From positions 1 to 64,000 of the forward strand of contig ADNK01000166.1 of NCBI GenBank assembly GCA_000320545.1: a stretch of DNA of 64,000 nucleotides, written 5' to 3'. Source of the DNA: Bigelowiella natans CCMP2755 (Eukaryota > Protista > Cercozoa). A program made the position numbers and the translations under genes. Shown here in pieces: positions 8,570 through 46,872 of this stretch (position 1 is the first letter of the stretch; each line of letters opens with the position of its first letter). The notes beneath the pieces are model-generated. The model was not told where the DNA came from. It made no database searches and saw nothing but the letters and a program-made list of their open reading frames with translations.

Positions 8570-9150
8570 TCACAAGAAGGGGCTGTCTTCAGAGTGTGAG
8601 GTGCCAAGTGTTCATGGACTGTTTTGTTTTCACGTTCCAAGAGCTAGCGTTGTTTGAACCAACGTGCGCTTGCCAAACGTGTTGAAATGCAGAGACTGTG
8701 ATGGAGACGGCATCCCAGACCCAACTTGCAAAGATGGCCAAGGTCGTTTTGGCGAAATCCAAAGCTCAAAGAATTGCGAGGATTCCTGGCCAAACGAGAA
8801 ATGCATTGCACGCACACTTGCACACTCCATGCACTGAACAGACGAGAGAAGGAACAAATCAAGTTCATGCGGCTTGTCATCACAGAGCCTGCAGCTGCAC
8901 ACTTGGATAACGATTTCGCTTGACAATCCAAATTTTCCACAGAAACAGAGGACCAGGGATTGAAGGAACACTGCAGCATGCACACTGCACACACTGCACA
9001 CTGTGCACACCGTCAGGTCACAGTGCTGTTCCACAACATGCTGCACATGCATCACATTCTTCATCTCAGCATCCCTAGATCATTTGTACGCAAAACAATG
9101 ATGTCACCAATGCATCGCATGCGCACACACACAGCTCATTTGCAATGAAA
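8570..9150. other. TpA-depleted relic sequence (probable hypermutated repeat debris)
   Basis: About 4 TpA in ~580 bp, CA/TG-rich decayed repeats (cacactgcacacactgcacactgtgcacac), and Tyr-free Cys/His-rich ORFs in several frames. Confidence 0.6.
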
Positions 9151-17689: not shown

Positions 17690-18440
17690 GAAGACATTGC
17701 GCGTGCGCCAATGGAGCAGCATGGATGCCTGTTGTTTTGCTAGTTTTGCTGCACATGCATGTGAGCGCGTCACCCATCTAGCCATGCTGGCATGGCAAAG
17801 AAAGAAAGAAACGTGATGATCGACCACATTTCCAAAGTGTTCTAGCTAGCTAGCTAGCCAGAACAGCATGACATTCTGGCATTTGCAAAGCACGAAATGC
17901 AGTGCTAGCTGCCTAATGGCAGTGCCTCAAGCTGAAATTTGAACGAAGACTGAATGAGAATTGACACGTTGGCTGCTGAGAAGTCCTGGCGGCTGACTCA
18001 ACTGCTTCGACACTCCCTCAGGCCTTCGCTAGTTCGGTCACGTGACAAGCAAAGGACCTGAACTCTTGAGTCAACCCGAAGGCGTGCGTGGCAGTGACTT
18101 TGCGAATCACCTTCCTGTGGTTGCCCCGCGAGGGGCTCACACATTTGGAATTTTCCGTTTTTTCCCCCACCGACTTGCATTTGTCGAATCAGGGGAAGCC
18201 AAACTTCTTCATTGAGATCCAATTTGCCAAATTGTTTGTTTGTTCAAATCAAATCCTAGCATGATCACACACTCCACACTCAGAACATCGTTTTCAGCAA
18301 CTTTTGTTGCCAATGCCTCAGTGGATTTCAATGGCTTTTCAATCTGGAATGCAGGACTGAGATCCTCTCCAAACTACATTTCCTGCGCGATTGCACAGCC
18401 TCTTTGGATCGTGCGACATCGAATGAGATCGTGAAACGGT
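17690..18440. other. TpA-depleted intergenic tract
   Basis: About 11 TpA in 750 bp, 9 of them in TAGC/GCTA context. Confidence 0.7.
17811..17905 (-). mobile_element. Degenerate 3'-end fragment of the same LINE family as 43860-45923
   Basis: gatgatcgaccacatttccaaagtgt and atttgcaaagcacgaaatgcagtgc match the reverse complement of the LINE 3' UTR at 45790-45870, interrupted by a (CTAG)n run. Confidence 0.6.
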
Positions 18441-20447: not shown

Positions 20448-20714
20448 TGTGGTACAAAAGTCTAAAGGAACAAAAAGTAACAATCATTACGGGCTGCAAA
20501 TTGTCACAAGGGAATATCGGCGTAACCCTGAAATTACCGTCTGGAACGGTGCGTCTATTTTCGAATTTTCCTTCAAGACCGTTCCCATCTCAGCGCATGT
20601 GTTTGATTTGGATGCAAACGTTGTCATGAACATGGAACAATTTCACTACAGCATCAACACTGTCTAGCTGTGCATGTGCCTGTGCATTTGCATGCACGTG
20701 TGTGCGAATCTACA

Positions 20715-20748
<34 letters not shown>

Positions 20749-21454
20749 CGCGCGCGCTTGGTGCCATGTGTGCAAGTTGTTGCTGTCGCTTGCTAGCTTG
20801 CTGCCCACTGTGCGCCATTTGCAGGCTGAGCTCCCAATGAATGCCATGGAAATCAGTGAAAAAAAAAGCCACAAAAGGCAAGTGTGTTGCAATGCATGTC
20901 ACATCGGCACAGCGTTGTGGCCAGCAAGCCAGTTTCCATGTGAGATGCAGTCTGGCAAGCACTCGCTGCTGAGCATGGTCACGTGTCACGGCAGTTTGTT
21001 GTCAAATCCAGACGACAACTGCATGTGAAAGCAAGTCTGATGCTGTGTCGTGCAGCGTGTTGCACCGTCAGTGGGGCCAGCTGTTGCCACTGCACGCAGC
21101 ACACACAACTGCATGATAGACATGCAATGCACTATGTGTATGACACATATTATGATAGACATGCAACACACTATGTGCATAATGTACATTGTGCATTGCT
21201 GTGTCTGTCATCTGTGACACAACATGCAAACATGCACGATGCAATGAGCAGCACTCATCACGCAATGACAACGTCATGATGGTCTGCACCATGCACGCAA
21301 TGAGCAGCAATCATGACAACATTTTGATGACACTCCATGCGCACAATGAACAGCATGCATCACTGGTCACAACGCTTTCATGGTCTCCATGCACGTGGCA
21401 ATCCCTGCACCAGGACTGAGGTCCTCACCAAGCTTGTTTAGACAACGACAAAGA

Positions 21455-21505
21455 CAACGATGAAAAACAACGTTTCCAAGTGGGTGTTGCAAGACACTTG
21501 CAAGG
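21455..21505 (-). mobile_element. Degenerate LINE 3'-tail copy
   Basis: gatgaaaaacaacgtttccaagtgggtgttgcaagacacttgca resembles the reverse complement of 45835-45875. Confidence 0.55.
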
Positions 21506-21618
21506 AAAGCATGACTCATCAAAAACTGCGAGTGAAAATGGCTTCATGCAAATCTCAGGATGAAAGAGCTGGCAGGAAATGGGATGAGAAGGAACACATC
21601 GATGATGAATGGATGAGT

Positions 21619-21795
21619 GAACAATGAACAATGAACAATGAACAATGATGACGAACTACATTTCCAAAATGTTGCAAGACATTTGCAGTGTGCGAAATGC
21701 AGTGCCTCGAACTGGCTTCAGTGAGGACTGTGACTAGCAAATCAACTAGCTGGTTTTTCAAAATGGCATGATTCAGTCATTGTGAAGCAATGACA
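21619..21795 (-). mobile_element. 5'-truncated LINE 3' end (3' UTR + (CATTGTT)n tail)
   Basis: Aligns over ~175 bp to the reverse complement of 45721-45900, e.g. cagtgcctcgaactgg-ttcagtgaggactgtgact-gcaaatcaact-gctgg; heptamer tail (gaacaat)n. Confidence 0.85.
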
Positions 21796-24660: not shown

Positions 24661-27048
24661 CGTGTCTACATGTGGGGTGTGCGAATGCAGGTAGTGAGTT
24701 TTGGTGAAACCCTAAATGGTTGCTGGTTGACCGATTTCACACCAATAAATACGGCTGGAAGTCGTGGTATGAAACGAAATCTTACTTGGCTTCCTGAGTT
24801 TTGTGTCTCGGTTCCCGACTCCTACTTTCGAGCGATACCTTGAAATTCCTTCTTTTTTTTTTTTATCCCGCGTCCTTCTCCTCGCTTTCTCGCCCCCTCC
24901 CCTCTCACCTGCCCCTCTTTCTTCTTTTTGTCCAACCCCAAAAAAAGGGTTGGATCTCCCGTTAGACATGTCTCCGACTTTGACGGGCAAAGATAAAGCT
25001 AAAGACGAGGCGGTTGACGCGACGGGTCTAACAGAAAAAGGTGAAGGAAAAGGGAAGGGAGGAAGAGGAGAGGGGGAACCAGCAACAACAACAGCAGCAG
25101 ACGAAGGAAAAAAACAAAATCAGGAAGAGCCGCAAAAGATCGCGAAAGGCAGCAATAGCAAAAGCCCTGCTGGGAAAGACAAGATCGAGAAAGGGGGTCC
25201 AAACAGCGCCTCCGCAAACGAGACCAATGTCGGGGCTAACGATAAGATTGATAACAAACTGAAACTTCCAAACTCTAGAAAGCTAGCAGCAGCGACAGGA
25301 CCGAAAATGCCTGATTCAGGCCGCTCGCACAGTTCTACGCAAACCGGCAGATCAGAGGGGGCACAAAGCGTCAGCTTGAGGTCGCTCATAGATTTCGATT
25401 TAGATGAAGAAATGAAGCGCCGTGATGATATCGACGCTGAAGATAGTGGCCACCAGAATGGGGAGGGTGACGCTGCAGCGCCTGCAGCTGCTGCTGCCTC
25501 CGCAACAACAACAGGACTTTTCTTCAGGGACCCCAATGAAGGTGCGGATGATTCAGACGAAAAGGGCAACACGAAGAAAAACGGCCTCCTCATCAAATTA
25601 ACATCGCCATCGATGCATGAGGCGATTCTGTCCCACGATGGTGATGATAATGATGAGAGAAAGAATAGCGCAGGAGCTGATCTCGCTGAAGGACAGGTCG
25701 GCAGTAGATCGAAACCAGGTGGGAGGGAAGCAACGACGACCCAAAACGGCCACTCTGATGCAGGAGGCACTCCCAACGGCCCTGGTTATTATTACAACAA
25801 TGAACAGCACATTCCTGCTCGTTCTCATCTGCAACAACGATACCCTCCTCATCACCCAGCTTCAAGCATCTATGCGCAGCAGCAGCAGCAGCAGCAGCAT
25901 CAGCATCATTCCCAGAATTTAGGAGATGGTGGTGCTGATCGAGGATATCGCTCGTATCACACGGGCCAAATTCAACGCTACAAGAGGACTCATCCCTCTC
26001 CGTCTCCTCACCATTACCAGCAGCAGCATCCATTCGGTCAGCATGTTGCACAGGGGGGGGGACATCGTCCCGCTCACTATCATGCAGATGACGACGACGA
26101 CGATGATGACGATGATTTGGTGGCGCTCTTCCATCCTGGCTTTGCAAAGCGGCGTGGAGACCACCACCGTCGTCACGGCCGTCATCATCCGCAGCGCGGG
26201 GTAGAAAGTGTGCAGCCGGGGCAGAGCGGAGGGAGGGGCCGTCCTTCCACAGAGACAATCTCAACAACGGAAGCTGACAGTGCCTATGCGACGCGACTTT
26301 CGCGTGGTGGAGCCCGCGAAAGAAAGAGGGCCTCACGCGCTCGCTACCCTCCCCACGGAACGCAGAACAGCAGCCAAAGAGACAATAGCAGTGGCCGTGG
26401 GAGGGGTGGGAGGTTGCGCAGCAACAGCAGAGACGAAGAAGGTGACCACGCCAGACTGTCAATGTCCTCCTCCTCCTCCACGGACTCCGAGGACCTTCTC
26501 ATGGCACTCAACTCCCTCCCAGCGACGACGTATCCAGCAGCAGCGGCATCAGCAGCAGCTAGAAACCGCCTGACCACAGGCTTTGAGTCTAGTAGGACCG
26601 CGGAGGGCACGCGGAGCTCACGGTTGCATAAGCAGCCCACAGCAGCAGTCATCGCGCCGGATCAGTCGATGCTGCGGCGTGGGCGCCGCAACTTCTTCGG
26701 TGAGAGAAAACGTGATGATGATGCTTCCGAAACGCATCTTGACGGCAGCAGTCTTTGTCGGTACAACGTCGGCATCGTCGAAGCAGATCGTAGCGGTCCC
26801 CGGCACAGGTGCGCGCAGGTGACATGCCCCCTACCCACGCAGCACACCTCGTATGAGAAGGAGGCGGCCATTTTCCACCGATCCGGACCGCCGAAGGACA
26901 TCCGGCTGCATCATGTTTATGGCATGTCGTCGTTGTATCATCATGGCCCGGCGCAAAAGGCCTGGTACTGCGGGCCGAGAAGGGATGGAACTCCAGGCGG
27001 TTTTGTCTTTGCATCGGCAGCGCTTGGAGTTGTGCAACATGAATATAG

Positions 27049-27091
<43 letters not shown>

Positions 27092-27589
27092 ATTTTTCGC
27101 TTTTTTCTTCTCCTCTTCTTCTCTGTCGTACTATATATGTAAGCCTAGTGCCCGTGAATGTGTGTATATATGTTTAAAGCACTTTCTCCTCATCATTTTC
27201 CTTGTGCTGCTGCTGCTCCTTTTTCTTCTTCTTCTTCTTCTTCCTCTTCCTCGTCGTCCCCACCACCTTCCTTTTCGCGCCTAGGCCTCTACGCATCCGC
27301 TCGCACGAGACCACTACCGACCCGATCCAGCGTTTCTTCCGCGGCCACAAATCCGAGCGAATCGAATGCATGGCGCTCAATCGCTCCCGCACCGTGGCAG
27401 CCACCGCGTCCCGGACCCCATCATCGTCGCCATCGTCATCGTCCTTCACCGTTTTCGTCTGGCATCTACATGGTGGGATGCAGCGGGTGTGCTCGTTCCA
27501 GCTCGGATTCGACAACGTCTCGGCCCTGGCCTTCAGCACGGACGACAAGGAGAATGCTCTGTTCGTGGCAGGGAGCCGGTTAGTAGTAA

Positions 27590-27624
<35 letters not shown>

Positions 27625-27993
27625 AGATCGTAGGTGGTTGCGCATGCGGCACGGCCGCACTGAGGCAGAGCTTTATAGACTTTCAGCTGTGATCATGCGA
27701 CTTTATGTGCACGCAGTGTTGGGCTGTCCTTCTCCGCTCTGCTGCTGCTACTTTGTCGTTGAATTACATGTACATTCAGGTGCAACAGGCCGACGTTGAG
27801 CGGCTGGTACTGGCGAGAGCACAAGCACATGATGGACATTCGACTCCCTATTATTAGCTCCTACTCGCAAACGCAGGGGGGGGGCGGGGAAGGAGATGGC
27901 GGCTTTACAGCACCTGGTAGTTAGTAAACTGTGATTGTGTGTGTGTGAGAGAGAGAGAAAGAGAGGGAGAGAGAGAAAGAGAGGAAGAGAGAG

Positions 27994-28033
<40 letters not shown>

Positions 28034-29408
28034 CAACGACGATGAATGTTCCTTGCAGTTTAGCTTCTTTCTTCCCTTATACGCTACGTCTGAGAGCACT
28101 TAACATCATCTATGCTAGCCAATGATTGTGTTCTATGTACCACTACCTGTTTCCCCTTCCCCCCCCCCCCCACTTTCTCTTCTCCAATCATATCCCAACG
28201 TTGGCATCAGGCATTGTTGGAATGTCTGTGGAGTCTATCATCGCAGGAGGAGATCGGTACATTATTGCGTGCTTGTTATTAGCAGCCCTTCGACTGGATG
28301 GAGACCCTCTTCCCTTTTCTTCTATTTCTGGGAATCGTGTCATTTTAATTTGCTTCACCAATATACTGGTTACAACACTTTTAGTTTCTCTGATTTTACC
28401 TCCGTCCCTCCCCTTCCTATCTCTCTATCTCTCTCGCTCGTGATAAGGAGAACGGCAATGTTCCACGTGCTTGTCTGGGGCCGCTGTCACCTCTCCGTGT
28501 CGCTGGTAGGAGAGAACATCGCTTCTTCACAGGCTCTCAGCGTAGAGTCCCTGCCACCGTTACCGCAGCCAGCAGCGGGAGGGGGGGGGAGAAGTTCGGG
28601 GTCAAAACAGGACAAAAAGGCGGCGGCAGCACCGTCACGGCCACGTGGCGCGCATCCGAGCAACTACGGTGGCGGGCAGAAGGAGAAACTGAGCCAGCAC
28701 CTCATCGAGGCGGCGCTCCTCCTCCCTCCCCTCCCTCCTCCTGACCGTTCTTCGGCAGCTTCGAGCACCCAGCTGCTAATCAGCACAGATTGCGGGGCCC
28801 TATATCGGATCGGTGCTAGTGATCTCAACGCCATCGTCGTCAGCGGCGCTCGTCGCCGACTTCCCGCTTCATTCTCCTGGGCTTCCGTGCCGCGGAACGA
28901 CGTCGTTTGCGCCATGTGCGCCGCCAGCAGCGGCCCCAAGGGCGGCCGTGCGCAACACGACAGTATTTTCGCCGCAACGCGGGGCTGGATGCTTCTCGTC
29001 TACTCGGCAATGTCCTCAGCGCCGTTGCAGCCGCACTTCACCGTAAGCTTCAGGGAGTATCGATGCAGGCCGGAGATCTTCCGCTGCTCGCCCGCGCTTG
29101 AGTTTGGGTCGGACGAGGAGATTGTGGATACCCTTCTGGAGGGGGGAGGGCACCGTGCACCGGACGAGTCAGTTCTCCGCCAGCGTGGTAGTGGCGTCGG
29201 TAGGGTGAGGAGAGGGCGAGGGGGTGTTGTCGGAGTCGACGCTTGCTGTGGAAGAGCACTAGTCTCCATGTCCAACAATCAGGTCGACGTCAGAGTAGTA
29301 GTAGTAGTAGTCTTTTGCCATGTGGTGTGCACTCTTCACGTTGTGCTTTTAGTTGTGGTAGCAGTAGCAGTAGCAGCAGCATTATCAGTAGTGAGGCTCA
29401 CGACACAC

Positions 29409-29447
<39 letters not shown>

Positions 29448-29479
29448 CACAAGACACTCAGCCATAGACACCTCGTCTA

Positions 29480-29538
<59 letters not shown>

Positions 29539-32500
29539 CTGCCAGATTTATGAGGTCGATCTCGCCCGCCGAGAAGCGTCCGTGGTACTGTATGGCGCTT
29601 GTGAGAGGCCCACTGATCTGGCGGGGACAACATCGCTGAACCGCGTGGCGAAGTGGATGCCGGAAGGAGAAGGTGGGGGAGGAGGGGGGGGGCCATCCTC
29701 CATCTTCGCGCTCTCCGCTCAAGTATTTCCTACAAGAAGACGACGCCGACACAGCAACGACGCCAGAGCCGCTAATGGCGGGGATGAGGACGATGGCGAT
29801 GGTGGTGGCGACGACGACGATGAAGCAACAAGTCGAGGAGGGCGCGCATACGGCCTCGTTTATCTGTGGAATCTCAAGAAGAAGTTCCAGCTGCCGGTTA
29901 TTCTAGTCATGGATGCGCCTGTGAGCGCCGTCGCTTTAGGAGGCTGTGGGCCGTCATCGCGGAAATGGGGCGGGGGGAGGGAGGTGGGTAGAGACCGACC
30001 CGTCGGTCGTCCTCCTTCACTAATCCATCGTAGCTCTCTGCTGTCGCATGCCGCAAGTACTAGTGAGGAGACGTTGAGAGTAGCCATCGGCACACGGAGC
30101 GGCAAGATCGTAGTTGTTCAATACCCTTCCGTCGTTGTGGAGACGAGTATCAACCTGAGCGCCTACAGCAGCAGCAGCAGCAGCAGCTTTCGGGGTAGCC
30201 ATCAGGATGACACCAAGTGGGTTGGTAGAAAGAGAACCTCGGCCCCTGCTGCATCCTCGTCTTCTCCGTCGTCGGCGTCGTCATCAGCCCCGCCGCCATG
30301 TGCAATATCACTCCTAGAGCACATCTCCCTCCACACGTTAGCTGCTGCAACGAGGTGCGGGGAGCTCTTTCTCTACAATCTGAAGCAGAAATCGGTCAGT
30401 CCTGTCATCCTGAAGAAGACGTCCTCACCGCCGTCATCATCACCACAAGCGGCGGCGCCAGCCGCAGGGAACAGCGGCCGAGGTCATAGCACCAAAGCCC
30501 CCGCGCCGCTCAGGGACAGCAGCCAAGTGTTGAGCGTCGAGCTGGATGCATCGTCCAGCCTGCTTTCTACATGCCACAGCAACGGGACGATGCGCTTCTT
30601 CAGAATCCGCACCCTCCCCTCGCAGGAGCTCTCGATGACATCTCCGGAGGTCCGAAACGCGGTCTGGATCCCCAGGAGCGGGCCCTTCGGCTATTGTATC
30701 CGCGGGGTTCTACTCAGCGGAGAAGACTCCTCCAACCCCTTGGCCCAGCAAACGCTCACATCATCCTCCTCCTTGCGGATGCACCAGCGGCGACGGCAGG
30801 GAGGGGACGGGAAGGAAGAGGAGGAGGAGGAGGCGGAGGAGGAAGAGGGTCGGCCCTCCCCCCTAGCTGACATTGCTCTAGTTGTATCCGAGCGTCATAG
30901 GATCGTGGTAACGGCTGGTGGGTGGACGTCGATGTCGTCCGCGCCGTCGTCATCATCTTCGTCGTTAAGGCCAAGTAATACTGAGATAATCCGGGTAGCA
31001 CCATTCCCGTGTCTCTTCAGTAGCACAAGAACGTTTGTACACTCGGCGCATTCGGCGGCGCGCCGATCCTCCTCCTCCTCCTCCTCCGCATCATCATCAT
31101 CAGCAGCAGCAACACTACCAGCATCACCACCATCATTGCCCCGCCTTAAGCTGGCATTTACAGGGGCCGATCGTTTCTTGATGTCGACCTCACGAAGAGA
31201 CCGCATCGCCGTTGCTTGGTTGGTAGTGCCAGCAGCAGCAGGAGCAGCAGCAGCGGCGGCAGACAACACCGCTCCTTCCCCATTCCTCTCGCCTTCCGTA
31301 ATCGACGACACGCACCAGCAGAGCCGGGACGGGTACAGTCGCAATGGTTTCCAGCACCACCACAGCGATGGCGATGATGGGAGAGAGGATGCCATGTCGC
31401 GCGCTTTGGGACTCGCAGCGTTCCACCGCAGCTGGCAAAGAGTCAGAGACGGCGGCGGCGGCGGCGGCGAAAACAGCCTTACTAAGGGTGACTACAGCGA
31501 CGATTTGCAAGCTAGAAGAGGTAGGGGGGGGAGGGCAATTCATGAAGGTGGTAGGAGTAGTTATGGAGGACAGCTACGTGGCCACATCCCAGCGTTCGGA
31601 GATAGGGCCTGGGGCGGAGGAGGAGGAGGAGGGTGGGCCGGAGCTAAAGCCGCCGCCGCCAGCGGCGTCGGCGACATCGACCATGATGATGGCAGCTCTT
31701 GGGAGTATGGTGATGGTGAGGAAGACGACGCTGGTGGCGACTCATCCTACTACTACAGCGAAAGCGGCGGCGAGGAGGAGGACGACGAGTATGATGACAT
31801 AAGGAACACCGGAAACCATTGGGAATACACCGATCCCAAAACGGGTAAGTAATCAAGGCGCATAATTTCGTGCACGCTCTGTGACAACGCAGGTTTATAT
31901 CTGAACACCATGTCTGTTTCTCCCCTTCCCACCCCTCTCCCCTCGTCCTCCCCCCCCCGGTCGCTTCCAGGTCAGCCATGGCGTCACCAATCACACCCCT
32001 ACTTCAACAAGAAGCGGCGGCGGGGGGGGGGCGGGGGGGCGCAACAACGCCGACCGCGCGCTCTTCGGCGCGGCTACGAGAAAAGGAGGGCAGAGCTGTC
32101 AGTTCCACAGTTCCAAGCTCTGAGCAAGGCCCTGCAGAAGAAGCTCTCGGAGCAGACCGCTCGAGCGACGCTCCTGAAGACGGAGCATCAGCGCAGCAAT
32201 AAGAGCTGCCAGCACCTGGAAAAGTACAGCAACCTCCTGGCGCGACATGTCGCGAGGGACCGCGCCGGCCATGCGATCACGAAGGAACAGCGCAGGCAGA
32301 TACTCCGACACCACTCCAAGATATCGCAGCTGAGCCTGCGCTTCCAGATGCCTATCGCGAGCTCTCGCGACAAGTGCAGCAGTAGTCGAAGCAACGCTGG
32401 TGGGGCTGTGAGTGGCAGCTCCAGGAAAAGCACGCTTTTCCACGCTTATGAGGAGAACAAACGGCTCAGAGAGGAATGCCTTCGCCTCGAGGCGATGGTC

Positions 32501-37112: not shown

Positions 37113-37175
37113 ACAACAATAAACAATGAACAATGATAAAGAACTACATTTCCAAAATGTAACAAGACATTAACA
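37113..37175 (-). mobile_element. Short, TpA-intact copy of the LINE 3' tail
   Basis: aataaacaatgaacaatgataaagaactacatttccaaaatgtaacaagacatt matches 21630-21683 and the reverse complement of 45836-45895, but keeps its TA dinucleotides. Confidence 0.8.
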
Positions 37176-38077: not shown

Positions 38078-39466
38078 TTGCCCCCGTATAACCCAGACTG
38101 CCCTATTGATATGTTTCTATTGCAGCCACTCAGCCCGAGGTCCAGACAAGGAATCGAAATTGCCCGAAGATTGTTGATCGAAAGGAATGACAATATACAG
38201 GAAATTAATGGGAGGGATCAGAATCTGGTGGAGAGGCTGGTCTCATATTTCTACCCTGTTGCGCTCAACATGAGCAGAAATGCTCCTGTCACCGTCAGGG
38301 ATTTGTGCAGGCTTTGTCGTCTGAGAACATCATGGGTGATCCGAACACTTTGCCGCGAAACCCAACTCCGAGAAGATGGTCCTAATGAATTATATGAAGG
38401 GATAATCAGGCGCAGAAGGCAAAGGCCCTGCTCGCCTTTCATCAGAGAGAATGAGAACCTTCTTCTTACCTCTGCAGGCATCTGCTTCTTGATCCAGCAA
38501 CACCATGGTATCCGAGATATAGCGATTGGTCTCCTCGTTGAACTCGTGAGGCGTTTGGTTGAAATAATCATTCACCTCAGCCATAGTCATGCAGAATTTA
38601 GAGATCGAGATGCGACCGCCCACGTGGAATTTCGCGAACGGAGAGTTGAAAGGGCGAACACTGCAATTAATTTATTGGGAGAAGGTTCAACGAGGTTGCG
38701 CTCCCAAAACAGCACCATGAGAGACGCTTATAGATCGTTTGTCCAGGTGGTTGATCCAGAAGAGACATCGGCGAGGAATTATCTTTCGACTTTACAGGGC
38801 AGACGAGTCAATGGCTCTGTGATGAATCAACTCGCACCGCTCGGAAAATCCATGATGGCAATATTGGAGAATCAAGCTCTAGAATTTATCACAGGAAGAG
38901 ATGCCAGAGATGAGATGATCAGAATCCACAACGACAATCCCACCTTAACAAGGGAGAGAAAACAGGCAATGTGTAGGAGCAAAGTGGAAAACGCTTATTA
39001 CAGAGGAATTGCAGCAAGGGTGGGCAGATGTGTAAGAGAGATGCTAGCACGACCGGTACGCAGGAACAGACGCCTCATGAGAAATGCAGACGGATCGCTT
39101 GTATACCGAGATGCAACCGTTGATGAATACATTTCCAGAATCTTCATGTTAACTCCGCAAAGGCCAAATCCAACGATGGTTATCACTACGGGTCCCATTC
39201 CCATGAGGAGGAGGAGAAGGGGTCTTCCAAACCAGGAAAGGAACACTCCACAGAGGCCAAATCCAAGGATGGCTCTCACTCCGGGTCCCATTCCCAGGAG
39301 GAGGAGGAGGAGAAGGGATCTTCCAAACCAGGCCAGGAATACTAGGCGTAGGTACAGACTTGGACTCAATCATTATGAATTAGAATTGATTTTTCATGAA
39401 ATTCTAAATCAGAGATATGTTCATTTTCCTTTTAGGAGGACAATTAAAAAGATCATGTACATCTGA
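38078..39466 (+). CDS. Intronless 462-aa Arg-rich, Lys-poor orphan protein; N-terminal region loosely BRO-N-like; possibly of viral/mobile origin
   Basis: Long uninterrupted ORF in AT-rich flanks, whose annotated start is a non-ATG (TTG) codon; first ATG is at codon 12. VTVRDLCRLC...LLLTSAGICFLIQ resembles the BRO-N pattern (DVCxxL...FIxESGLYxLI). The family call is a by-eye inference. Confidence 0.6.
   Translation: MPPYNPDCPIDMFLLQPLSPRSRQGIEIARRLLIERNDNIQEINGRDQNLVERLVSYFYPVALNMSRNAPVTVRDLCRLCRLRTSWVIRTLCRETQLREDGPNELYEGIIRRRRQRPCSPFIRENENLLLTSAGICFLIQQHHGIRDIAIGLLVELVRRLVEIIIHLSHSHAEFRDRDATAHVEFRERRVERANTAINLLGEGSTRLRSQNSTMRDAYRSFVQVVDPEETSARNYLSTLQGRRVNGSVMNQLAPLGKSMMAILENQALEFITGRDARDEMIRIHNDNPTLTRERKQAMCRSKVENAYYRGIAARVGRCVREMLARPVRRNRRLMRNADGSLVYRDATVDEYISRIFMLTPQRPNPTMVITTGPIPMRRRRRGLPNQERNTPQRPNPRMALTPGPIPRRRRRRRDLPNQARNTRRRYRLGLNHYELELIFHEILNQRYVHFPFRRTIKKIMYI
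39152..39340 (+). repeat. In-frame tandem duplication (93 + 96 bp) encoding TPQRPNP...GPIPxRRRRR..LPNQ.RN
   Basis: Units 39152-39244 and 39245-39340 are directly alignable. Confidence 0.9.
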
Positions 39467-39676: not shown

Positions 39677-40150
39677 GATTGTTTTGAAATCGATTGACTC
39701 AATGTTGCTTTTTCATCATCGATTGTGTTTTGAGTTCCTAAACAGAATCATTCATTGTGCTGTTGCTGCGCTTCTGCTGTTCCTGTGCTTCTGCTTGACA
39801 ACAATGCAATTCCATAGTCTCATCGGTTGTTTCCGTTGCCATGCTCGGACAATTCCTTTCATTTTCACACATTCACTTCACCCCCATCTCAATCCATCAC
39901 ACAAGCGCGAACGCGCATCCTGAAAATTCTGTAGCCTTCATGGCTGCATAGCGTACGCACGTGCGAACACATGCAGTTCAGTGCACATGTTCTTTGCAAC
40001 ATGTGCTCCATTTGCAGCATTTTTTCACCTGCACATGTCCCAAAGTGAACATTGAATGGGATCAAAATTCATTTGGCACATGGACACAATGTCCATGTGC
40101 GTGTGCGCGTGAGGAACACACGTGCCCAGGCACACCACATGCACCCAAAA

Positions 40151-40542
40151 TGTCAGAAGTGCAAGGCGACGCGCTGCAGAATGCAGGCCAGCAGCACAGT
40201 CAGATGAAGGAAGGAAGGGTGGGAGGACAGCTGCACAAGCGGCTGCCTCGATTCTCTGTTGAGTTCTGACCTTTTCACATGCATGCACCAAGTCAACTGT
40301 CATCAGGCGAAATCACCTGAACCACGTGCATGACATCGTGCTGCAGAAGGAAGGAAGACGCGCCCACTTCCTTTGCTGGCACATGGCTGATGCAGCACTG
40401 TCCTGCCCTTGTCGCAGGCACAGAACCTGCCTGCATCAACAGCCCATTCTGCACTGCTTGTCGCAGCCTGCAAGTGCCCGCCAGCGTTGCTGCTGCTGCC
40501 ACAAGCATGCACTTCGCGCATTGAGTGCAAAGCACTCCAACA
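40151..40542 (-). repeat. 3' LTR
   Basis: 389/392 identical to 43370-43761 by eye. Confidence 0.9.
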
Positions 40543-43369
40543 CGCTGCCCTTTCCTTCAATTTGCTGTGCAGCAAATTGCGAAGTGCAACACACGGGCGA
40601 TGTGTTGTCACCGCATGCTCCAGGACAGAAAAGATGACCATGCGCATCATCAAAAACTGTCCTGGCCAGCATGCCAGAGCCAGAGCAGACAAAAACAACG
40701 GCTGGCACGCGTGCATGCGTGCATGCATGCATGCAGCCATCGTGAAAAACTGATCTGCTCAGTCTCACGAGCTGCCAGGATCATTGATCCTGCAGTGGCA
40801 CCGCTGGGACAACGTCCCACGACCACGCTGCCCTTTTCCTCTCTTCTGTTGATCAGCAAGAGAGGGGGGAAAAAGGCGATGCCCATTGGGGTGCATCGTT
40901 TCGGAAAAAATGTGAAAAGAAAAGGAAAGCACCACTTCGGTGTTCCTTCAAATGCCCGCACCAGAGTGAGAAAAGCAACAAGTGCTCAAACACTTGTTCG
41001 CTGACTCACAAATCCAAAGCCCGTGACAAGCACCCACGGCTGGGGTGCAAGGTGCACGGAGGGAGAGGGGGGGGGAGGGGAATGGAGACACTTGCATGGA
41101 GAGGCCATGCACCTGTGGGTGATGCAAACACCTGCAGCGTGTGTCAAAATGAAGTCACAGAAGCTGAAGGCAGAGAAGCTGCCTTGGCTTCAATTTCCTT
41201 TCCGGGGCCGTGTTGATCACGGCCCCATTGCAGGTGCAGACAAGACATCAAGATTTCGTTGAGGCCGTTCTTCGGAGCATCACTGACGGAGGTGCATGCT
41301 CTTCTCACAATTGAGCTCAAGAGTCATGTGTTCGTGTGTGTGCTTTCAACTGAACGCTTCGTTTGCAATTTTTGTGTTCATGGCAATCACTCAGAAGTCA
41401 CACGGGATCCACAATTCAGAAACACAGTCAGTCAATGAAGTGGAGGCAGAATGGACGTCTCCATTCTGTTGCCCACCCATTTCCTGACTGTCATCTTTTT
41501 GCATTGTCGTCCCACATGGTTGACCGTGCTCACAGACTGGTCGTGGAGGATGGCTGTGACACTTCATCACGTGTGACTGTGCCGAAATTCTGTTTTGTCA
41601 CAATCGCATGACGTTGATTGTGTTGACATCGTTCAATCTCGAGTCGCAATGTTCGTTGGTCGGTGATGTTGCTACGAGCATCGTCCTTCGATCATTCGAT
41701 GGCATTGCCTGCGGTGTTCGTTTGTTCAATGGCGCTGAACAATTGGTTTTTTTTTGTTTTCAGGATCCTTTTCATCTGCGCAAGCGATTGTTCTTCAGAG
41801 CTTGCGTGGTTCGTTTCCGACACCAGCCGGCACAGACCACAATTGTCGATTTCGGTGTCAATGTTGACCCTCACCGATTGACCTCTGACAGGTCGGAATT
41901 GACAGGAGGACTGTGAACATTGACATCGAACAACGGGGATGTCTCCAAGGCAATTGCTTTGATTTCATTCGATGCAACATTCTTCTTCCGCAAGAAGGCG
42001 CTTGCGTCGAACCCCCATTCCTTGGGTCAAGTCGTGAGTTCACCGTCGTTCAACATCCTCGTGTGGGTCACCCAGGACTTGCGAGCGGCAAAGAACGCTG
42101 CAACCCTGCAGGTGCACCGGATGTGTGATGATGCATGGAGATTTCGACACCGGAGGTGTTGTCAGCACCTCCGTGATTTCATTGCCCATTTTCGCATCGT
42201 GTGTTTGCGGTCGCATGCCCGCACATCACAATCATGATTGCGGCACTGTCCGGAAAAAAAAAAAATGCAAGCATGCGTTGTGAATCGGTGCATGATTCTT
42301 GATTGTGACCCCGTGATGCAAATCGCGCTCATCACAGTGTCGGCATGAGGCTGTCAATGATTGCTTTGTTCATCAGGTAGCCGCGATTTGCCACTCACGT
42401 TCCGGGCATTGCAGGCCGCAGCGAACGCAGGTTGGCATGCTTTTCCTTGGAATCAATTTCATTTTCGATTTGTTCACATCATCATGAAAAATTTGTGCAC
42501 TTGAATTTGGCATGGTGCAAGCAAGTGCGAGAGATTCACAAATCGTTTCACTGTCACACGGTGTGCGTTTCTTGGATTCACTCATGAGTGCACATCCTTG
42601 AATCGCATTTCTGCATGCTGGACTGTCACTTTGTCGCACGTGTCACTCATTCATTCCCTGCAATTGTCACAGCATGGGAGAGCATGGTGGTTCAGCCACT
42701 TGTCGTGATCCACCATTCTCCGATGTGGACAACACTCTGATGCCACGGTCGTGTTCTCAAGGTTCGCAAATCTTTCCTTGATCTGTCAAGATCCAGATGA
42801 GACCATTGTTTTTTTTCATCAGATCGTTGTGGCATTTGTCTCAGGGAAGAACAGTGTCCCGCTGTTTCGTTTCATGGCACATGCCTGGGATGGGAATCTT
42901 GCCAGGGAACAAGGGGCAATTTGATCATGACAACAACTTTTTGGTTGCAAGTGGTCATGATTTCATTTTCGAGTTTCAATTTGATCATGACAACTTTGTG
43001 GTTGTGATTCCATTTTCGTGTTTGATGGGGAACACTTTGATTTCGCTTTTTTTTTCTTGTTTGCTGTTTGTTCCTTGTTGCAGTTGGTCGATTTGACTTT
43101 TTTTTTGAGTTTTGCCCCTCTGTTGAGTCACTTTGCTTGGTTGCAAATTTTTGTTTTTGAGTCATGGGTGATCACATTTCGTTTTGTTCCAACACAGATT
43201 CATTCTTTCCAGACTGGTTGGATTTTCGGTGCACCAGCACCTAGCAATCCGACCATCACCGACCAAGTTCGTGTCGTGGCACCTTCAAACCAGTTCTGCC
43301 AGACTGAACTGTTTGAGCCAAGTTTTTTTGGGCGCAACTGGGCGGCGGAAGCCGCGTGGGCTCACAACC

Positions 43370-43761
43370 TGTTGGAAGTGCAAGGCGGCGCGCTGCAGAA
43401 TGCAGGCCAGCAGCACAGTCAGATGAAGGAAGGAAGGGTGGGAGGACAGCTGCACAAGCGGCTGCCTCGATTCTCTGTTGAGTTCTGACCTTTTCACATG
43501 CATGCACCAAGTCAACTGTCATCAGGCGAAATCACCTGAACCACGTGCATGACATCGTGCTGCAGAAGGAAGGAAGACGCGCCCACTTCCTTTGCTGGCA
43601 CATGGCTGATGCAGCACTGTCCTGCCCTTGTCGCAGGCACAGAACCTGCCTGCATCAACAGCCCATTCTGCACTGCTTGTCGCAGCCTGCAAGTGCCCGC
43701 CAGCGTTGCTGCTGCTGCCACAAGCATGCACTTCGCGCATTGAGTGCAAAGCACTCCAACA
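43370..43761 (-). repeat. 5' LTR
   Basis: Adjacent to the PBS at 43358-43369. Confidence 0.9.
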
Positions 43762-43859
43762 CAAAAAGCACACGTGCTCCATTCACATCCAGAGAGAGCC
43801 CTGATGGTGAGTGCAAGCACTTGTGTGATGGACATGGCAACAGCACGCACAACACGTGC

Positions 43860-45923
43860 ATGACATCACGTGTCCATCGTCTCAGTGCCCTCAGCAAGCT
43901 GGTGTCTGGAGCTGCAACGACGAGAGTCCATGAACACCTGGAAAACGACAACTGTCTTGCGGATGAACAAGGTGATTTTGGAAGGAATCGTGGCACTGAC
44001 TTCCACATCTTCAACCTGTGCCAAGTGTTGCATCTCCGCAAGGCCCAAAACCAAGGATCCACAGTTGCTTTCGTTGACCCACGCAAAGCCTGTGATGAAG
44101 TTTGGATCCAAGGTCCACGAGCTGAGCTGCTCAGGAGTGGTGTGACGGGCAGAGTGTGCAACCTCTTCAAGAACATGCTGGCCTCCCAATCCCGCAGGGT
44201 TGGGTCCCCGATTGATCAAGCTCTGAGCCAACCCTTCCACGTCAACCAAGGTCTCCCTCAAGGTGCCCCGGAATCACCAGTTCCACTTGCTCTGTTTGTT
44301 GACGACCTCACAGAACGGCTGAGACAGCGTGGTTGTGGCGTCCAGTTTGCCAACACTCGTGGACCAGGTCTCTTCTTTGCAGATGACAGCGCTCTGGTTG
44401 CTGCCACTCCTCTGGACATCAAGCTGGCTCTTGAAGTGACGACTCAATGGTGCAGAAAATGGAGACTCAAGGCAAACGGAGATGAGTCTGGCATCACGAT
44501 TGTCGGGTCTTCTGTTCTCAAACAGGAGTGTTCACGATGTGAGTTCAGGTGTTGTGGGGAATTGATGCGCGCAGTGAACCAATGTCGACACTTGGGAATT
44601 GCCTTCCAAAGCTCCTTGTCGTTCCACACACACATCGTGGACACTGTGAAAGCAGCGAAGCGAGCTTCCGGCAGGCTCAAGTGCAGCTTTGCTGGACACT
44701 CAGGCCTCCGACCCAGAACACGGATCCACCTTTGGAATGCTCTCGTGCGCCCCACTCTTGAACGTGGCATGGGTCCAATTTGTCCCATTCTGCCCCAAGC
44801 TGTCTCAAAAACCGGCTGCAGAGTGTCCAGACTCAGTTCCTCAAAGAGACTCTTCGTGCCCTGCACACAGCCCATGGCCAACCACTGTGCTTCCTGTTGT
44901 CTGAACGTGGCCAGGAAGGTTTGCAGGCCCGCTGGGACAAGTCTCTCGTGAGCCTCCTGAGCAGGATGCGTCAGCAACCTGATGAATCCATGACAAAGGA
45001 TCTTCCACTCCTGTCCCTGGATCAGGCTGATGCTCTGTGCTCAAGTTGGGGTCACAACGTTGGGTCTGTTCTTCACCGTGTCACTGGCTGTGACCAATCT
45101 GCCTGTGGCTTGGACCTGTTGGTCAACTTGGACCAGTCCCATCCAAAACTGGTTGATGTTGACCTCAATCGCAGAGTCAGGGCTCACCTGTCCACCAATG
45201 GCAACTTGTGTCGCAGCTTTTGCTCGTTCGTCAAACCCGACATCCCAACTTGCAAATCCAGAGCCTGGGCGAGGAGCCACATTGGAAGGCCAGCTTCCAG
45301 ATTGTTTGAGTGTCATCTTGATGATTGACAGCATGACAATTCAGGTGTGTTGCTCAAACTTCAGCTCCGCGCTGGGACTTGCGAAACTGAGGAGCACAGG
45401 GCCAAAGTTTGCAACTTGCCCCCCTCTTTCTCGGTGTGTCCTCTTTGCAATGCTGAAGTTGTTCAAAGTGTCAACCACCTCATCCATCATTGCACTCACT
45501 TGAATGCAGAGAGATGCAAGCTTCTCTCGCACATGAGATCAGCTCTGGGTTCAGCTTCTTCCCGCCACTCTTCATTCTTTGACGCTCCAGACTCCTCCAA
45601 AACCAAAACTCTGCTGGGGGCCCCCTCAGATGATCCAATCGCAGATCGTCATGTGGACATGGCCTTCAGGAAGTTTTTGCTCAGAGTGGAGGTCTTGCGC
45701 CGTCAGAATTTTGCTGCTGATGTCATTGCTTCTCAATGACCAAGTCATGCTGATTTTGGCAAACCAGCCAGTTGATTTGCCAGTCACAGTCCTCACTGAA
45801 ACCAGTTCGAGGCACTGCACTTTGCACGCTGCAAGTGTCTTGCAACACTTTGGAAGTGTGGTTTTTCATCATTGTTTCATTGTTTCATTGTTTGTCATCA
45901 TTGTTTCATTGTTTCATCATTGT
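43860..45923 (+). mobile_element. 5'-truncated non-LTR retrotransposon (LINE) ORF2 remnant: RT domain, C-terminal CCHC zinc knuckle, 3' UTR, (CATTGTTT)n tail; frameshifted and TpA-erased
   Basis: EQGDFGRNRGTDFHIF, AFVDPRKACDEVW, QGLPQGAPESP, LFFADD, WRLKAN, QCRHLGI (RT); CPLCNAEVVQSVNHLIHHC (zinc knuckle). Frameshift near 44770; in-frame TGA at about 45326; tail 45867-45923. Confidence 0.92.
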
Positions 45924-46272
45924 CTTCTCTCTTTCTTTCTCTTTTTCGTCTTCTCCCTTTCTGTCACCAGGCTTTTCCTTTTTTGAAACGCTTCGCATTG
46001 CTCGTTGTGACTGAAAAATGGCATCAATGTGCACGATTGCACAATTGATGTCACGTCGTTGTCTGCTGCGAAACACAACACACATCCACAATCATGCATG
46101 TTCGGCGCACGCTAGCCAGTTGGCACGCACGTGCGATGCACGTTTGTCTTGCTAGCTTGCAAGCATGTTGCATTTGACCTCTGCATGTGCAGCACTTCTG
46201 CCATCAATCGCTCCGTCGCAGCAATGAAGCGTGAAGTAAATGCATGCGCATGCACGTGCCGAACGTGTCTAG

Positions 46273-46310
<38 letters not shown>

Positions 46311-46872
46311 TGTTGTTGTGTGTGGCGTTGTTGTGTGTGATGTTGTTGTGTGTGTGTGTGTGTGTGCACCGCACAGCAGCTAGCAGAGCGCTACAGTTGT
46401 GCTGCGTGCGTGCACCTGCGTTCATTTCGTTTGCTAGTTTGCGTGCGCGGCATGCTAGCTAGCAGCATGCGGAACGACATGTTGCAAATGATCATCAAAT
46501 CAGCCGATGCACGGCATTGTCCCTGCTCGCTATCATTGCGGGGCGAATGTGATGAAGTGATCAAATCTTTTCTGCAAACATGCACACGTGCAGCCGTGGA
46601 ATGCTAATTGCTAAATGACACAAACGCACTTGCTGTGCCGCAAATTGCACACAAGTGTGTGTGTGCATTCATCTGAACTATAGAACATACTTTCTGCTCT
46701 TTTTTTTACCATTTGGTTTTATTATTTCGAAACCTTGTGCAGAACTACACAGCACATTTATTTCTTAATGATACGTATGTATCGAAATGAATGGAAGAGT
46801 TCGTGGGACAAATTTTGGGTGGCTTCTACTGCACTGATGAAAGGCGAATAATTAACAATTCATCTATTCCTC

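What the first reader, a model, noticed from the sequence alone, without database searches (positions are those of the whole stretch)
40151..43761. LTR paradox: both LTRs are TpA-free yet near-identical, and their one dinucleotide discordance is TG vs CA at the integrase end
The LTRs differ at only 3 of 392 positions. Two of those are tgtCAgaagt (40151) vs tgtTGgaagt (43370), the two alternative resolutions of an ancestral TGTTAGAAGT. If every TA had mutated independently after insertion, about half of the ancestral TA sites should show such discordance, not one. Inference: an already hypermutated element was still retrotransposed in trans, keeping TA only at cis-essential sites (att end, PBS), and those were erased after this insertion. 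That would mean the process is ongoing, fast and repeated across transposition cycles. Alternatives are LTR-LTR gene conversion, context-determined outcome, or assembly homogenisation.
Basis: partly seen in the sequence, partly recalled or inferred. Interest (0 to 1): 0.8.

Follow-up and report, generated by a model that had tools for sequence, protein, structure and literature searches.

The report
TpA-erased retrotransposon nest in Bigelowiella
A small retrotransposon nested in a LINE of the alga Bigelowiella natans has lost nearly every TpA to a recently reported host mutator. Its two matching repeats, and matching TG/CA patterns in LINE copies elsewhere, suggest that already-mutated elements were still being copied.

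Summary
Two 392-nt direct repeats (40151-40542, 43370-43761) have TG..CA ends and a 5-bp target duplication. Neither holds a TpA, and they differ only at repeat positions 4-5 (CA vs TG) and 19.

The TpA-free block is larger than reported: 39955-46112, with 3 TpA in 6.2 kb. It matches a LINE insertion flanked by a 12-nt direct repeat, into which the LTR element is nested.

The organism is Bigelowiella natans. TpA-to-TpG/CpA hypermutation of foreign DNA in this alga was reported in a 2026 preprint, so the basic phenomenon is known. The preprint's lists of TpA-depleted genes include this LINE family.

- Outcomes are not fixed by context. The preprint's own mutation table shows single TpA sites hit on either strand.
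- At 68 sites polarised with un-mutated environmental relatives, the window LINE shares its TG/CA state with two copies on other scaffolds (13-16% discordant). A third copy is 45% discordant, as independent resolution predicts.

So hypermutated templates were copied again. For the LTR pair itself, LTR-LTR gene conversion remains a live rival, because all three differences sit in the first 19 nt. No sibling LTR copies could be retrieved.

The parts
39955..39966 (.). Left copy of a 12-nt direct repeat (ACGCACGTGCGA); candidate target-site duplication of the outer LINE insertion
   Evidence: this is the only shared k-mer of 9 nt or more between the two borders. 1.7% of random stretch pairs in the window share a 12-mer. 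The last TpA before the block (39954) ends on its first base.
39967..40145 (+). TpA-free left arm of the outer insertion, inferred to be the 5' part of the truncated LINE
   Evidence: 0 TpA, TpG o/e 2.35, CpA o/e 2.23. No comparator covers this part, so LINE identity is inferred from the flanking repeat and the composition.
40146..40150 (.). Left copy of the 5-bp target-site duplication CAAAA of the LTR element
40151..40542 (-). Left LTR (the 3' LTR if the sense strand is minus), 392 nt, TG..CA, 0 TpA; CA at positions 4-5 and A at position 19
40543..40558 (-). Polypurine tract, read on the minus strand, abutting the left LTR
   Evidence: Sequence. The reverse complement is a purine run directly upstream of the LTR. 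The internal part is T-rich on the plus strand (AT skew -0.12). Together these argue for a minus-strand sense.
40543..43369 (-). Internal region of the LTR element, 2827 nt, no recognisable gag or pol, 3 surviving TpA
   Evidence: no Pfam hit at or near the gathering score; longest open frame 165 aa; no homologues; the survivors are in CTAC, GTAG and CTAG contexts.
43370..43761 (-). Right LTR (the 5' LTR if the sense strand is minus), 392 nt, 0 TpA; TG at positions 4-5 and G at position 19. Its start and end form a perfect 6-nt terminal inverted repeat
43762..43766 (.). Right copy of the 5-bp target-site duplication CAAAA
43767..45739 (+). Reverse-transcriptase ORF remnant of a non-LTR (LINE) retrotransposon. 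It is broken by a 5' truncation, one nested insertion, at least one frameshift and at least one in-frame stop, and it has no Tyr codon left
   Evidence: RVT_1, E 1.3e-13; 80-91% identical to B. natans models P0001, P0003 and P0004; two frames are used; 77-79% DNA identity to the un-mutated contigs L009 and L010.
45740..45925 (+). LINE 3' UTR ending in short tandem (CATTGTTT)-like tail repeats
   Evidence: matches 21795-21602 on the minus strand at 83%, and shorter 3'-end fragments at 21454-21502, 37115-37169 and 17796-17841.
45926..46124 (.). About 200 nt of TpA-free sequence (one CTAG) between the LINE tail and the right 12-nt repeat; origin unexplained
   Evidence: no homology to the sequence beyond the tail of the second LINE copy.
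46125..46136 (.). Right copy of the 12-nt direct repeat

Best explanation
The block is a 5'-truncated LINE of Bigelowiella natans with a 3.6-kb non-autonomous LTR retrotransposon nested in it. Both carry the end-state signature of this alga's TpA-directed mutator, which turns TpA into TpG or CpA depending on which strand's adenine is hit. That mutator is known to act on integrated double-stranded DNA.

Most of the erasure happened in ancestral genomic copies, before the RNA that gave rise to these insertions was made. The two LTRs were therefore born identical and already almost TpA-free. After integration the mutator removed what was left: one TpA inside the LTR's terminal inverted repeat was hit on opposite strands in the two LTRs.

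Shown:
- the anatomy of the block;
- the direction and symmetry of the mutation;
- that outcomes are not set by context;
- that dispersed LINE copies share TG/CA haplotypes.

Inferred:
- that the LTR element itself was copied from a hypermutated template with machinery supplied in trans;
- that the CA/TG pair descends from a single TpA.
For: Organism and known process:
- Bigna1 gene models are 80-91% identical to the window's RT remnant.
- preprint 10.64898/2026.01.13.699255 reports TpA-only A>G/T>C hypermutation in mutation-accumulation lines.
- the three sibling LINE models are in its TpA-depleted CDS lists.

Direction of change: of 79 TpA sites in the un-mutated relatives L009 and L010, the window reads TG at 37, CA at 31, CG at 5 and something else at 6. 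This near-symmetry fits a process on double-stranded DNA.

Same enzyme specificity: surviving TpA in the window's TpA-poor patches have a 3' G in 26 of 34 strand contexts, against 22% elsewhere (Fisher 1.6e-11). In my tally of Table S2, a 3' G follows the target A in only 20 of 206 hits.

Outcomes are not determined by context:
- four sites were hit on both strands.
- context effect has P = 0.15.
- the P0004 control is 45% discordant.

LTR concordance: P(at most 1 discordant) is 6e-3 to 4e-9.

Hypermutated templates were copied: window vs P0001 gives 39 same and 6 other state; vs P0003, 26 and 5. These copies lie on other scaffolds.

Boundary: the TpA-free block starts at the base where the 12-nt flanking repeat starts, with three TpA within 35 nt outside it.

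Timing: at the published rate, 98% of TpA are lost in about 3.5e5 generations. Only about 0.1 ordinary LTR differences would accrue in that time.
Against: - No second copy or solo LTR of this LTR family was found, so inheritance of its haplotype is not shown directly.
- All three LTR differences lie within the first 19 of 392 nt. The chance that the one ordinary difference falls there is about 5-10%. Gene conversion would predict that clustering.
- The right LTR's TG state makes a perfect 6-nt inverted repeat with the LTR end, so TG rather than TpA could be the older state.
- No primer binding site was recognised.
- A TpA-free LTR cannot hold a canonical TATA box or the canonical polyadenylation hexamer. 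Whether it can still be transcribed is unknown.
- The sharing among LINE copies could in principle reflect segmental duplication rather than retrotransposition, because their flanks were not available.
Confidence: 0.6

Rival explanations
1. The LTR element arrived with normal TpA content and was hypermutated in place, independently in each LTR. LTR-LTR gene conversion then homogenised the two repeats except for their extreme edge.
For: - All three differences lie at LTR positions 4, 5 and 19, where a conversion tract bounded by the end of homology would not reach.
- Intra-element LTR conversion is common in other genomes: predicted in 25% of plant LTR pairs (PMC7251063).
- In-place hypermutation is the mode actually observed in the mutation-accumulation lines.
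Against: - It needs one or more tracts covering about 370 of 392 nt without leaving mosaic discordances, and no discordance at the other LTR edge.
- Three TpA in favourable or half-favourable contexts survive about 200 nt from the element, just outside the outer repeat. In-place erasure would therefore have to be sharply confined.
- In the same genome, dispersed LINE copies share TG/CA states. Local conversion cannot explain that, so inheritance is already needed.
Confidence: 0.18
2. The adenines were deaminated on the RNA or on single-stranded cDNA during the very retrotransposition event that made this copy, before the LTRs were duplicated. This would resemble APOBEC3 editing of retroviral cDNA.
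For: - It would also give identical LTRs and a block that ends exactly at the insertion boundary.
- The preprint's candidate enzyme is an ADAT2-like deaminase of single-stranded substrates.
Against: - Erasure is about 98-100% complete, and TG and CA outcomes are nearly equal (37:31; LTR excess about 17 each). That would need about half of the sites edited on the RNA and all the rest on the cDNA in a single pass.
- The published events occurred in integrated single-copy DNA, on both strands.
- LINE copies show stepwise, partly shared and partly independent resolution.
Confidence: 0.1
3. The near-identity is an assembly or polishing artefact: reads from the two LTRs were pooled, so the consensus was homogenised.
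For: It cannot be excluded from the window alone. Differences survive only next to a unique flank.
Against: - Reads anchored in unique sequence would protect roughly the outer 100 nt at each LTR border, about half of the LTR. With about 26 former TpA at about 45% discordance, around 6 discordances would be expected there, and 1 is seen.
- The LTRs are short (392 nt) and 2.8 kb apart.
Confidence: 0.05
4. Each TpA has a context-determined outcome, so two LTRs mutated independently would end up alike.
For: A 3' G is a poor context (20 of 206 hits in my tally), so some bias exists.
Against: - Four TpA sites were hit on opposite strands in different lines.
- One-sided G contexts shift outcomes only about 2:1, P = 0.15.
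- The independently resolved LINE copy P0004 is 45% discordant with the window at the same sites.
Confidence: 0.02

Closest known systems
TpA-to-TpG/CpA hypermutation of integrated viral DNA in Bigelowiella natans (Mettrop et al., bioRxiv 10.64898/2026.01.13.699255, 2026)
   Same: - Same organism, same dinucleotide target and products, and same 3'-G avoidance.
- The block meets their cluster criteria.
- Its LINE relatives are in their TpA-depleted CDS lists.
   Different: - Their direct evidence concerns a giant-virus insert and a virophage insert that are only partly depleted. Retroelements appear only as enriched Pfam domains.
- They do not analyse LTRs, copies of one family, the timing relative to transposition, or gene conversion.
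- Here erasure is essentially complete, and LTRs and sibling copies provide a clock.
[quoted passage not shown]
   Same: A host process that riddles mobile DNA with transitions in one dinucleotide context. It acts on chromosomal DNA, hits both strands and runs to saturation.
   Different: - RIP is C-to-T at CpA and creates TpA; here TpA is destroyed.
- RIP needs duplicated sequence and a sexual phase. The B. natans process hits a single-copy viral insert in vegetative lines.
- The RIP description rests on my own knowledge.
APOBEC3 editing of retroviruses and endogenous retroviruses
   Same: A deaminase-based defence whose scars are inherited by later copies. Edits made before LTR duplication appear in both LTRs.
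   Different: - APOBEC3 deaminates cytosine on minus-strand cDNA, so it is one-sided (G-to-A), partial and limited to one cycle.
- Here adenine is the target, both strands are hit equally, and the changes are cumulative on integrated DNA.
- The APOBEC3 description rests on my own knowledge.
Methyl-CpG decay of silenced transposons
   Same: It gives the same two products, TpG and CpA, through either-strand deamination of a self-complementary dinucleotide.
   Different: The substrate is CpG, not TpA. CpG here is only mildly depleted (o/e 0.5-0.8).
Non-autonomous LTR retrotransposons (LARD/TRIM-type)
   Same: LTRs, TG..CA ends, a 5-bp target duplication, a polypurine tract and a non-coding interior.
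   Different: No primer binding site was recognised, no partner element was identified, and no other family members were seen.

Membership tests
B. natans TpA hypermutation cluster (Mettrop et al. 2026) | [quoted passage not shown] | tested here: met
   six windows (40001-46000) have Rho TpA 0.00-0.02 and Rho CpA+TpG 1.54-1.81.
B. natans TpA hypermutation cluster (Mettrop et al. 2026) | The changes are TpA to TpG or CpA relative to un-mutated relatives | tested here: met
   68 of 79 TpA sites in L009 and L010 read TG (37) or CA (31) in the window.
B. natans TpA hypermutation cluster (Mettrop et al. 2026) | The sequence comes from B. natans and is of foreign or mobile origin | tested here: met
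   an RVT_1 ORF, 80-91% identical to Bigna1 models that are listed as TpA-depleted.
B. natans TpA hypermutation cluster (Mettrop et al. 2026) | Elevated de novo mutation rate at this locus | not testable with these tools
   This needs read data from the mutation-accumulation lines. With 3 TpA left, almost no target remains.
LTR retrotransposon | Two long direct terminal repeats with TG..CA ends and short terminal inverted repeats | tested here: met
   392 nt, 389 of 392 identical, with a 6-nt inverted repeat in the right copy.
LTR retrotransposon | Target-site duplication of 4-6 bp | tested here: met
   CAAAA on both sides.
LTR retrotransposon | Polypurine tract next to the 3' LTR | tested here: met
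   a purine run at 40543-40558, read on the minus strand.
LTR retrotransposon | Primer binding site next to the 5' LTR | tested here: inconclusive
   No tRNA gene in the window and no B. natans tRNA set at hand. Neither orientation shows an obvious site.
LTR retrotransposon (autonomous) | gag and pol coding capacity | tested here: not met
   no domain hits and no long open frame. The element is therefore filed as non-autonomous.
Non-LTR (LINE) retrotransposon | Reverse transcriptase of the LINE type and a 3' tail of short tandem repeats | tested here: met
Non-LTR (LINE) retrotransposon | Target-site duplication flanking a 5'-truncated copy | tested here: inconclusive
   a 12-nt repeat with chance about 2%, but it lies 200 nt beyond the recognisable tail.

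The most novel reading that the evidence does not exclude
Retroelement lineages in B. natans and its wild relatives survive the TpA-directed mutator by running out of targets. Lineages stay mobile while purged of TpA, keeping it only where it cannot be replaced, and each new insertion then loses those last sites. Two observations point this way. An environmental LINE contig (L001) is intact over 324 codons and holds only two TpA, both in favourable contexts and both in the two Tyr codons of the conserved Y-x-Y-L-G reverse-transcriptase motif. The LTR pair's only discordance lies in its terminal inverted repeat.
Probability: 0.3. Interest if true: 0.75.

Novelty: new member of a known kind. Interest (0 to 1): 0.5.

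Why it matters
The preprint established that B. natans mutates TpA in integrated viral DNA. It left open whether the process stops mobile elements. LTR pairs and dispersed copies of one family act as built-in clocks for that question: sites resolved before copying agree, and sites resolved afterwards disagree about half the time.

Here that logic indicates that LINE templates were about 70% resolved when they were copied again. The LTR element was probably more than 90% resolved. If this holds genome-wide, the mutator damages coding elements but does not immediately stop their sequences from being propagated.

The approach also gives a simple, purely descriptive way to date and order hypermutation against transposition across the genome. 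Un-mutated relatives in TARA and ENA ocean metagenomes make it possible to polarise the changes.

Tried and rejected
- Sibling DNA: exact-protein look-ups for a window ORF and for the sibling models P0001 and P0003 found nothing, so DNA of sibling B. natans copies could not be fetched.
- LTR relatives: a degenerate LTR pattern had no match in metagenome contigs. A protein search with the longest ATG ORF across the LTR found no homologue. A self-BLAST of the window found no other LTR copy.
- LINE relatives in JGI metagenomes: the search for related loci returned only distant LINEs (23-31% identity) with normal TpA content, which was not informative.
- Coding capacity of the LTR interior: Pfam scans of 20 ORFs on both strands gave nothing near the cut-offs.
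- Left arm 39967-40145: tblastn with all available relatives found no match, because none covers that part of the protein.
- Sequence beyond the LINE tail: no homology with the second copy.
- Trinucleotide excesses in the block were too confounded by composition to read enzyme specificity. The contexts of surviving TpA gave a clean answer instead.
- Rfam and tRNA scans of the window were empty.
- Context determinism was considered and rejected.
- A one-cycle scheme in which the two LTRs are edited on different strands during reverse transcription predicts the opposite assignment of TG and CA to the 5' and 3' LTR in either orientation. This is reasoning only and was not tested.
Full report
**What is there.** The two direct repeats exist as described: 40151-40542 and 43370-43761, 392 nt each, starting TG and ending CA. 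They are flanked by the 5-bp duplication CAAAA. They differ only at repeat positions 4-5 (CA vs TG) and 19 (A vs G). Neither holds a TpA, and TpG and CpA are each about twice as frequent as expected.

The TpA-free state is not a property of the LTR pair alone. The block 39955-46112 holds three TpA in 6.2 kb where about 300 are expected. No other dinucleotide shows anything comparable in the window.

**Anatomy.** Directly right of the right repeat lies an open frame with an RVT_1 reverse-transcriptase domain. It continues in a second frame to 45739 and is followed by a 3' UTR ending in short tandem repeats. Fragments of the same 3' end recur at four other places in the window. This is a non-LTR (LINE) retrotransposon. 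It is 5'-truncated, split by the nested insertion, and has at least one frameshift and at least one in-frame stop.

A 12-nt direct repeat (39955-39966 and 46125-46136) brackets the whole block. It is the only shared word of 9 nt or more between the two borders, and the chance of such a match is about 2%. The left edge of TpA loss coincides with it to the base, while TpA persist 1, 6 and 23 nt outside it. About 200 nt between the LINE tail and the right repeat are also TpA-free and remain unexplained.

The element between the LTRs has no detectable coding capacity. A polypurine tract abuts the left LTR when read on the minus strand, and the interior is T-rich on the plus strand. The sense strand is therefore probably minus, and the discordant dinucleotide then lies at the U5 end. 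I could not recognise a primer binding site.

**Organism and prior knowledge.** The RT frame is 80-91% identical to three JGI gene models of Bigelowiella natans. A 2026 preprint (10.64898/2026.01.13.699255) reports a mutation-accumulation experiment in this alga. Two integrated viral regions mutate about 1000-fold faster than the rest of the genome, and 230 of the 231 mutations there are A-to-G or T-to-C, which the authors place on TpA.

The preprint also reports 124 TpA-depleted, CpA+TpG-enriched clusters genome-wide and an enrichment of RT, endonuclease-RT and DDE domains among TpA-depleted genes. It proposes an ADAT2-like deaminase as the enzyme. The block here meets the cluster criteria in six consecutive 1-kb windows. 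All three sibling LINE models are in the preprint's TpA-depleted lists. The basic phenomenon is therefore already known. The preprint does not mention LTRs, retrotransposition timing, sequence context beyond the dinucleotide, or gene conversion.

**Direction and specificity, tested here.** A full-library protein search turned up two short environmental contigs: L009 from a TARA Oceans metagenome and L010 from an ENA assembly. They encode members of the same LINE family with normal Tyr content and normal TpA content (Rho 0.89 and 0.99). They align to window 43893-45185 at 77-79% DNA identity. Of their 79 aligned TpA sites, the window reads TG at 37, CA at 31, CG at 5 and something else at 6. 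That polarises the change. It also shows the near-symmetry expected of a process acting on either strand of double-stranded DNA.

Surviving TpA in this block and in four smaller TpA-poor patches of the window are overwhelmingly followed by G on one or both strands. CTAG accounts for 10 of 17 survivors, and 26 of 34 strand contexts have a 3' G, against 22% elsewhere (Fisher 1.6e-11). In my tally of the preprint's Table S2, a 3' G follows the target A in only 20 of 206 TpA hits. The same enzyme specificity is thus visible in the end state.

**The 'paradox'.** Time is not the problem. From the preprint's numbers the per-TpA rate in a targeted region is about 1.1e-5 per generation. At that rate 98% of TpA vanish in about 3.5e5 generations, during which only about 0.1 ordinary differences would accrue between two 392-nt LTRs. 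What needs explaining is concordance.

- Outcomes are not context-determined. Table S2 contains four TpA sites hit on opposite strands in different lines. At the polarised LINE sites, a one-sided 3' G shifts the outcome only about 2:1 (P = 0.15).
- The genome supplies an internal control. The sibling copy P0004 differs in state from the window at 10 of 22 scorable sites (45%), as independent resolution predicts.
- With 16-33 former TpA per LTR, at most one discordance has P between 6e-3 and 4e-9. The TpA density of the un-mutated relatives, 6.8%, gives about 26 sites.

**Are hypermutated templates copied?** I could not retrieve any sibling of the LTR element. At the 68 polarised sites, the window shares its TG/CA state with P0001 (scaffold 60) at 39 of 45 scorable sites. 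It shares it with P0003 (scaffold 80) at 26 of 31. These are 13% and 16% discordance (P = 2e-6 and 3e-4 against 47%), compared with 45% for P0004.

Scaled by the control, roughly 70% of sites were already resolved in the common template of these three copies, and the rest were resolved independently afterwards. This supports 'hypermutation, copying, further hypermutation' for this family. One caveat applies: without flanks I cannot exclude segmental duplication for the siblings. The window copy itself has a candidate target-site duplication and a base-sharp composition boundary.

**Retention at indispensable sites.** A more distant environmental relative (L001/P0002, 53% identical) has two TpA in 1106 nt. 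Both lie in favourable contexts, and both are in the two Tyr codons of the conserved Y-x-Y-L-G motif, which is also Tyr-x-Tyr in an un-mutated distant relative. In the B. natans copies no Tyr codon is left at all.

This is suggestive of selection acting on a lineage under the mutator, but it is a single contig. For the LTR, the surviving site sits in the 6-nt terminal inverted repeat, but its T-TA-G context is half-refractory. In addition, the TG state of the right LTR completes a perfect inverted repeat with the LTR end. 'Cis-essential' is therefore not shown, and even the TpA ancestry of that pair is an inference.

**Rivals.**
- LTR-LTR gene conversion after in-place hypermutation fits the fact that all three differences lie within 19 nt of one LTR edge. 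It is a common process elsewhere (PMC7251063). I give it about 0.18.
- Editing during the retrotransposition cycle itself would also give identical LTRs. It is hard to square with near-complete, strand-symmetric erasure (about 0.1).
- Assembly homogenisation is unlikely, because reads anchored in unique sequence should preserve several discordances in the outer 100 nt of each LTR border (about 0.05).
- Context determinism is refuted.

**Verdict.** The underlying mutator is already described. The locus is a new, unusually clean retrotransposon example of it.

While reasoning about primer binding sites and promoter or polyadenylation signals, I recalled a few short generic motifs from memory in my private notes. 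None was entered into a tool, used as a comparator or relied on for a conclusion.

The per-site state test classified single codons in memory and printed counts only. Consensus lines printed by the alignment tools were not used.

Noticed in passing
window 8601-9050, 17951-18400, 20701-21100, 21201-21700: Four further small TpA-poor, TpG/CpA-rich patches in intergenic DNA. Their few surviving TpA are mostly in CTAG. Two of them adjoin LINE 3'-end fragments.
   Followed up: partly
window 21117-21185: A roughly 70-nt island dense in TpA (about ten), containing a short tandem duplication, sits between two TpA-purged stretches. It could be a later insertion or a protected segment.
   Followed up: no
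window 21602-21795 (minus strand): A second copy of the LINE 3' end keeps four TpA, all followed by G (three CTAG, one GTAG). The 45721-45920 copy has resolved the three sites that align cleanly to CA or TG. This looks like an earlier stage of the same erasure.
   Followed up: partly
window 45926-46124: About 200 nt beyond the LINE tail but inside the 12-nt flanking repeat are also TpA-free. This may be sequence carried along from the source locus, or an unrecognised fragment.
   Followed up: partly
L001 (ENA ERZ27286678 contig, 1106 nt): An environmental LINE fragment 53% identical to the window's RT has only two TpA. Both are in the Tyr codons of the conserved Y-x-Y-L-G motif and both are in favourable contexts. 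TpA purging therefore occurs outside the reference strain.
   Followed up: partly
L009 (TARA_SAMEA2620396 scaffold, 682 nt) and L010 (ENA ERZ27286897 contig, 635 nt): Un-hypermutated members of the same LINE family exist in ocean metagenomes, with normal TpA and Tyr content. They are useful as polarising outgroups.
   Followed up: yes
window 11975-17306 (plus strand): Exons of an Aquarius-type intron-binding helicase with a C-terminal SAP domain; an ordinary host gene.
   Followed up: partly
window 24803-31852 (plus strand): A G+C-rich stretch (52-61%) with three long open frames (779, 505 and 756 aa) that have no Pfam match. Whether they are of host or foreign origin was not examined.
   Followed up: no
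window 38078-39466 (plus strand): A 462-aa open frame with 93-96-nt tandem repeats encoding a Glu/Ser/Gly-rich protein, with no Pfam match, immediately left of the block.
   Followed up: no
window 46274-46370 and many other sites: (TG)n microsatellites are very frequent across the window. One lies just right of the TpA-free block, about 140 nt beyond the right 12-nt repeat.
   Followed up: no
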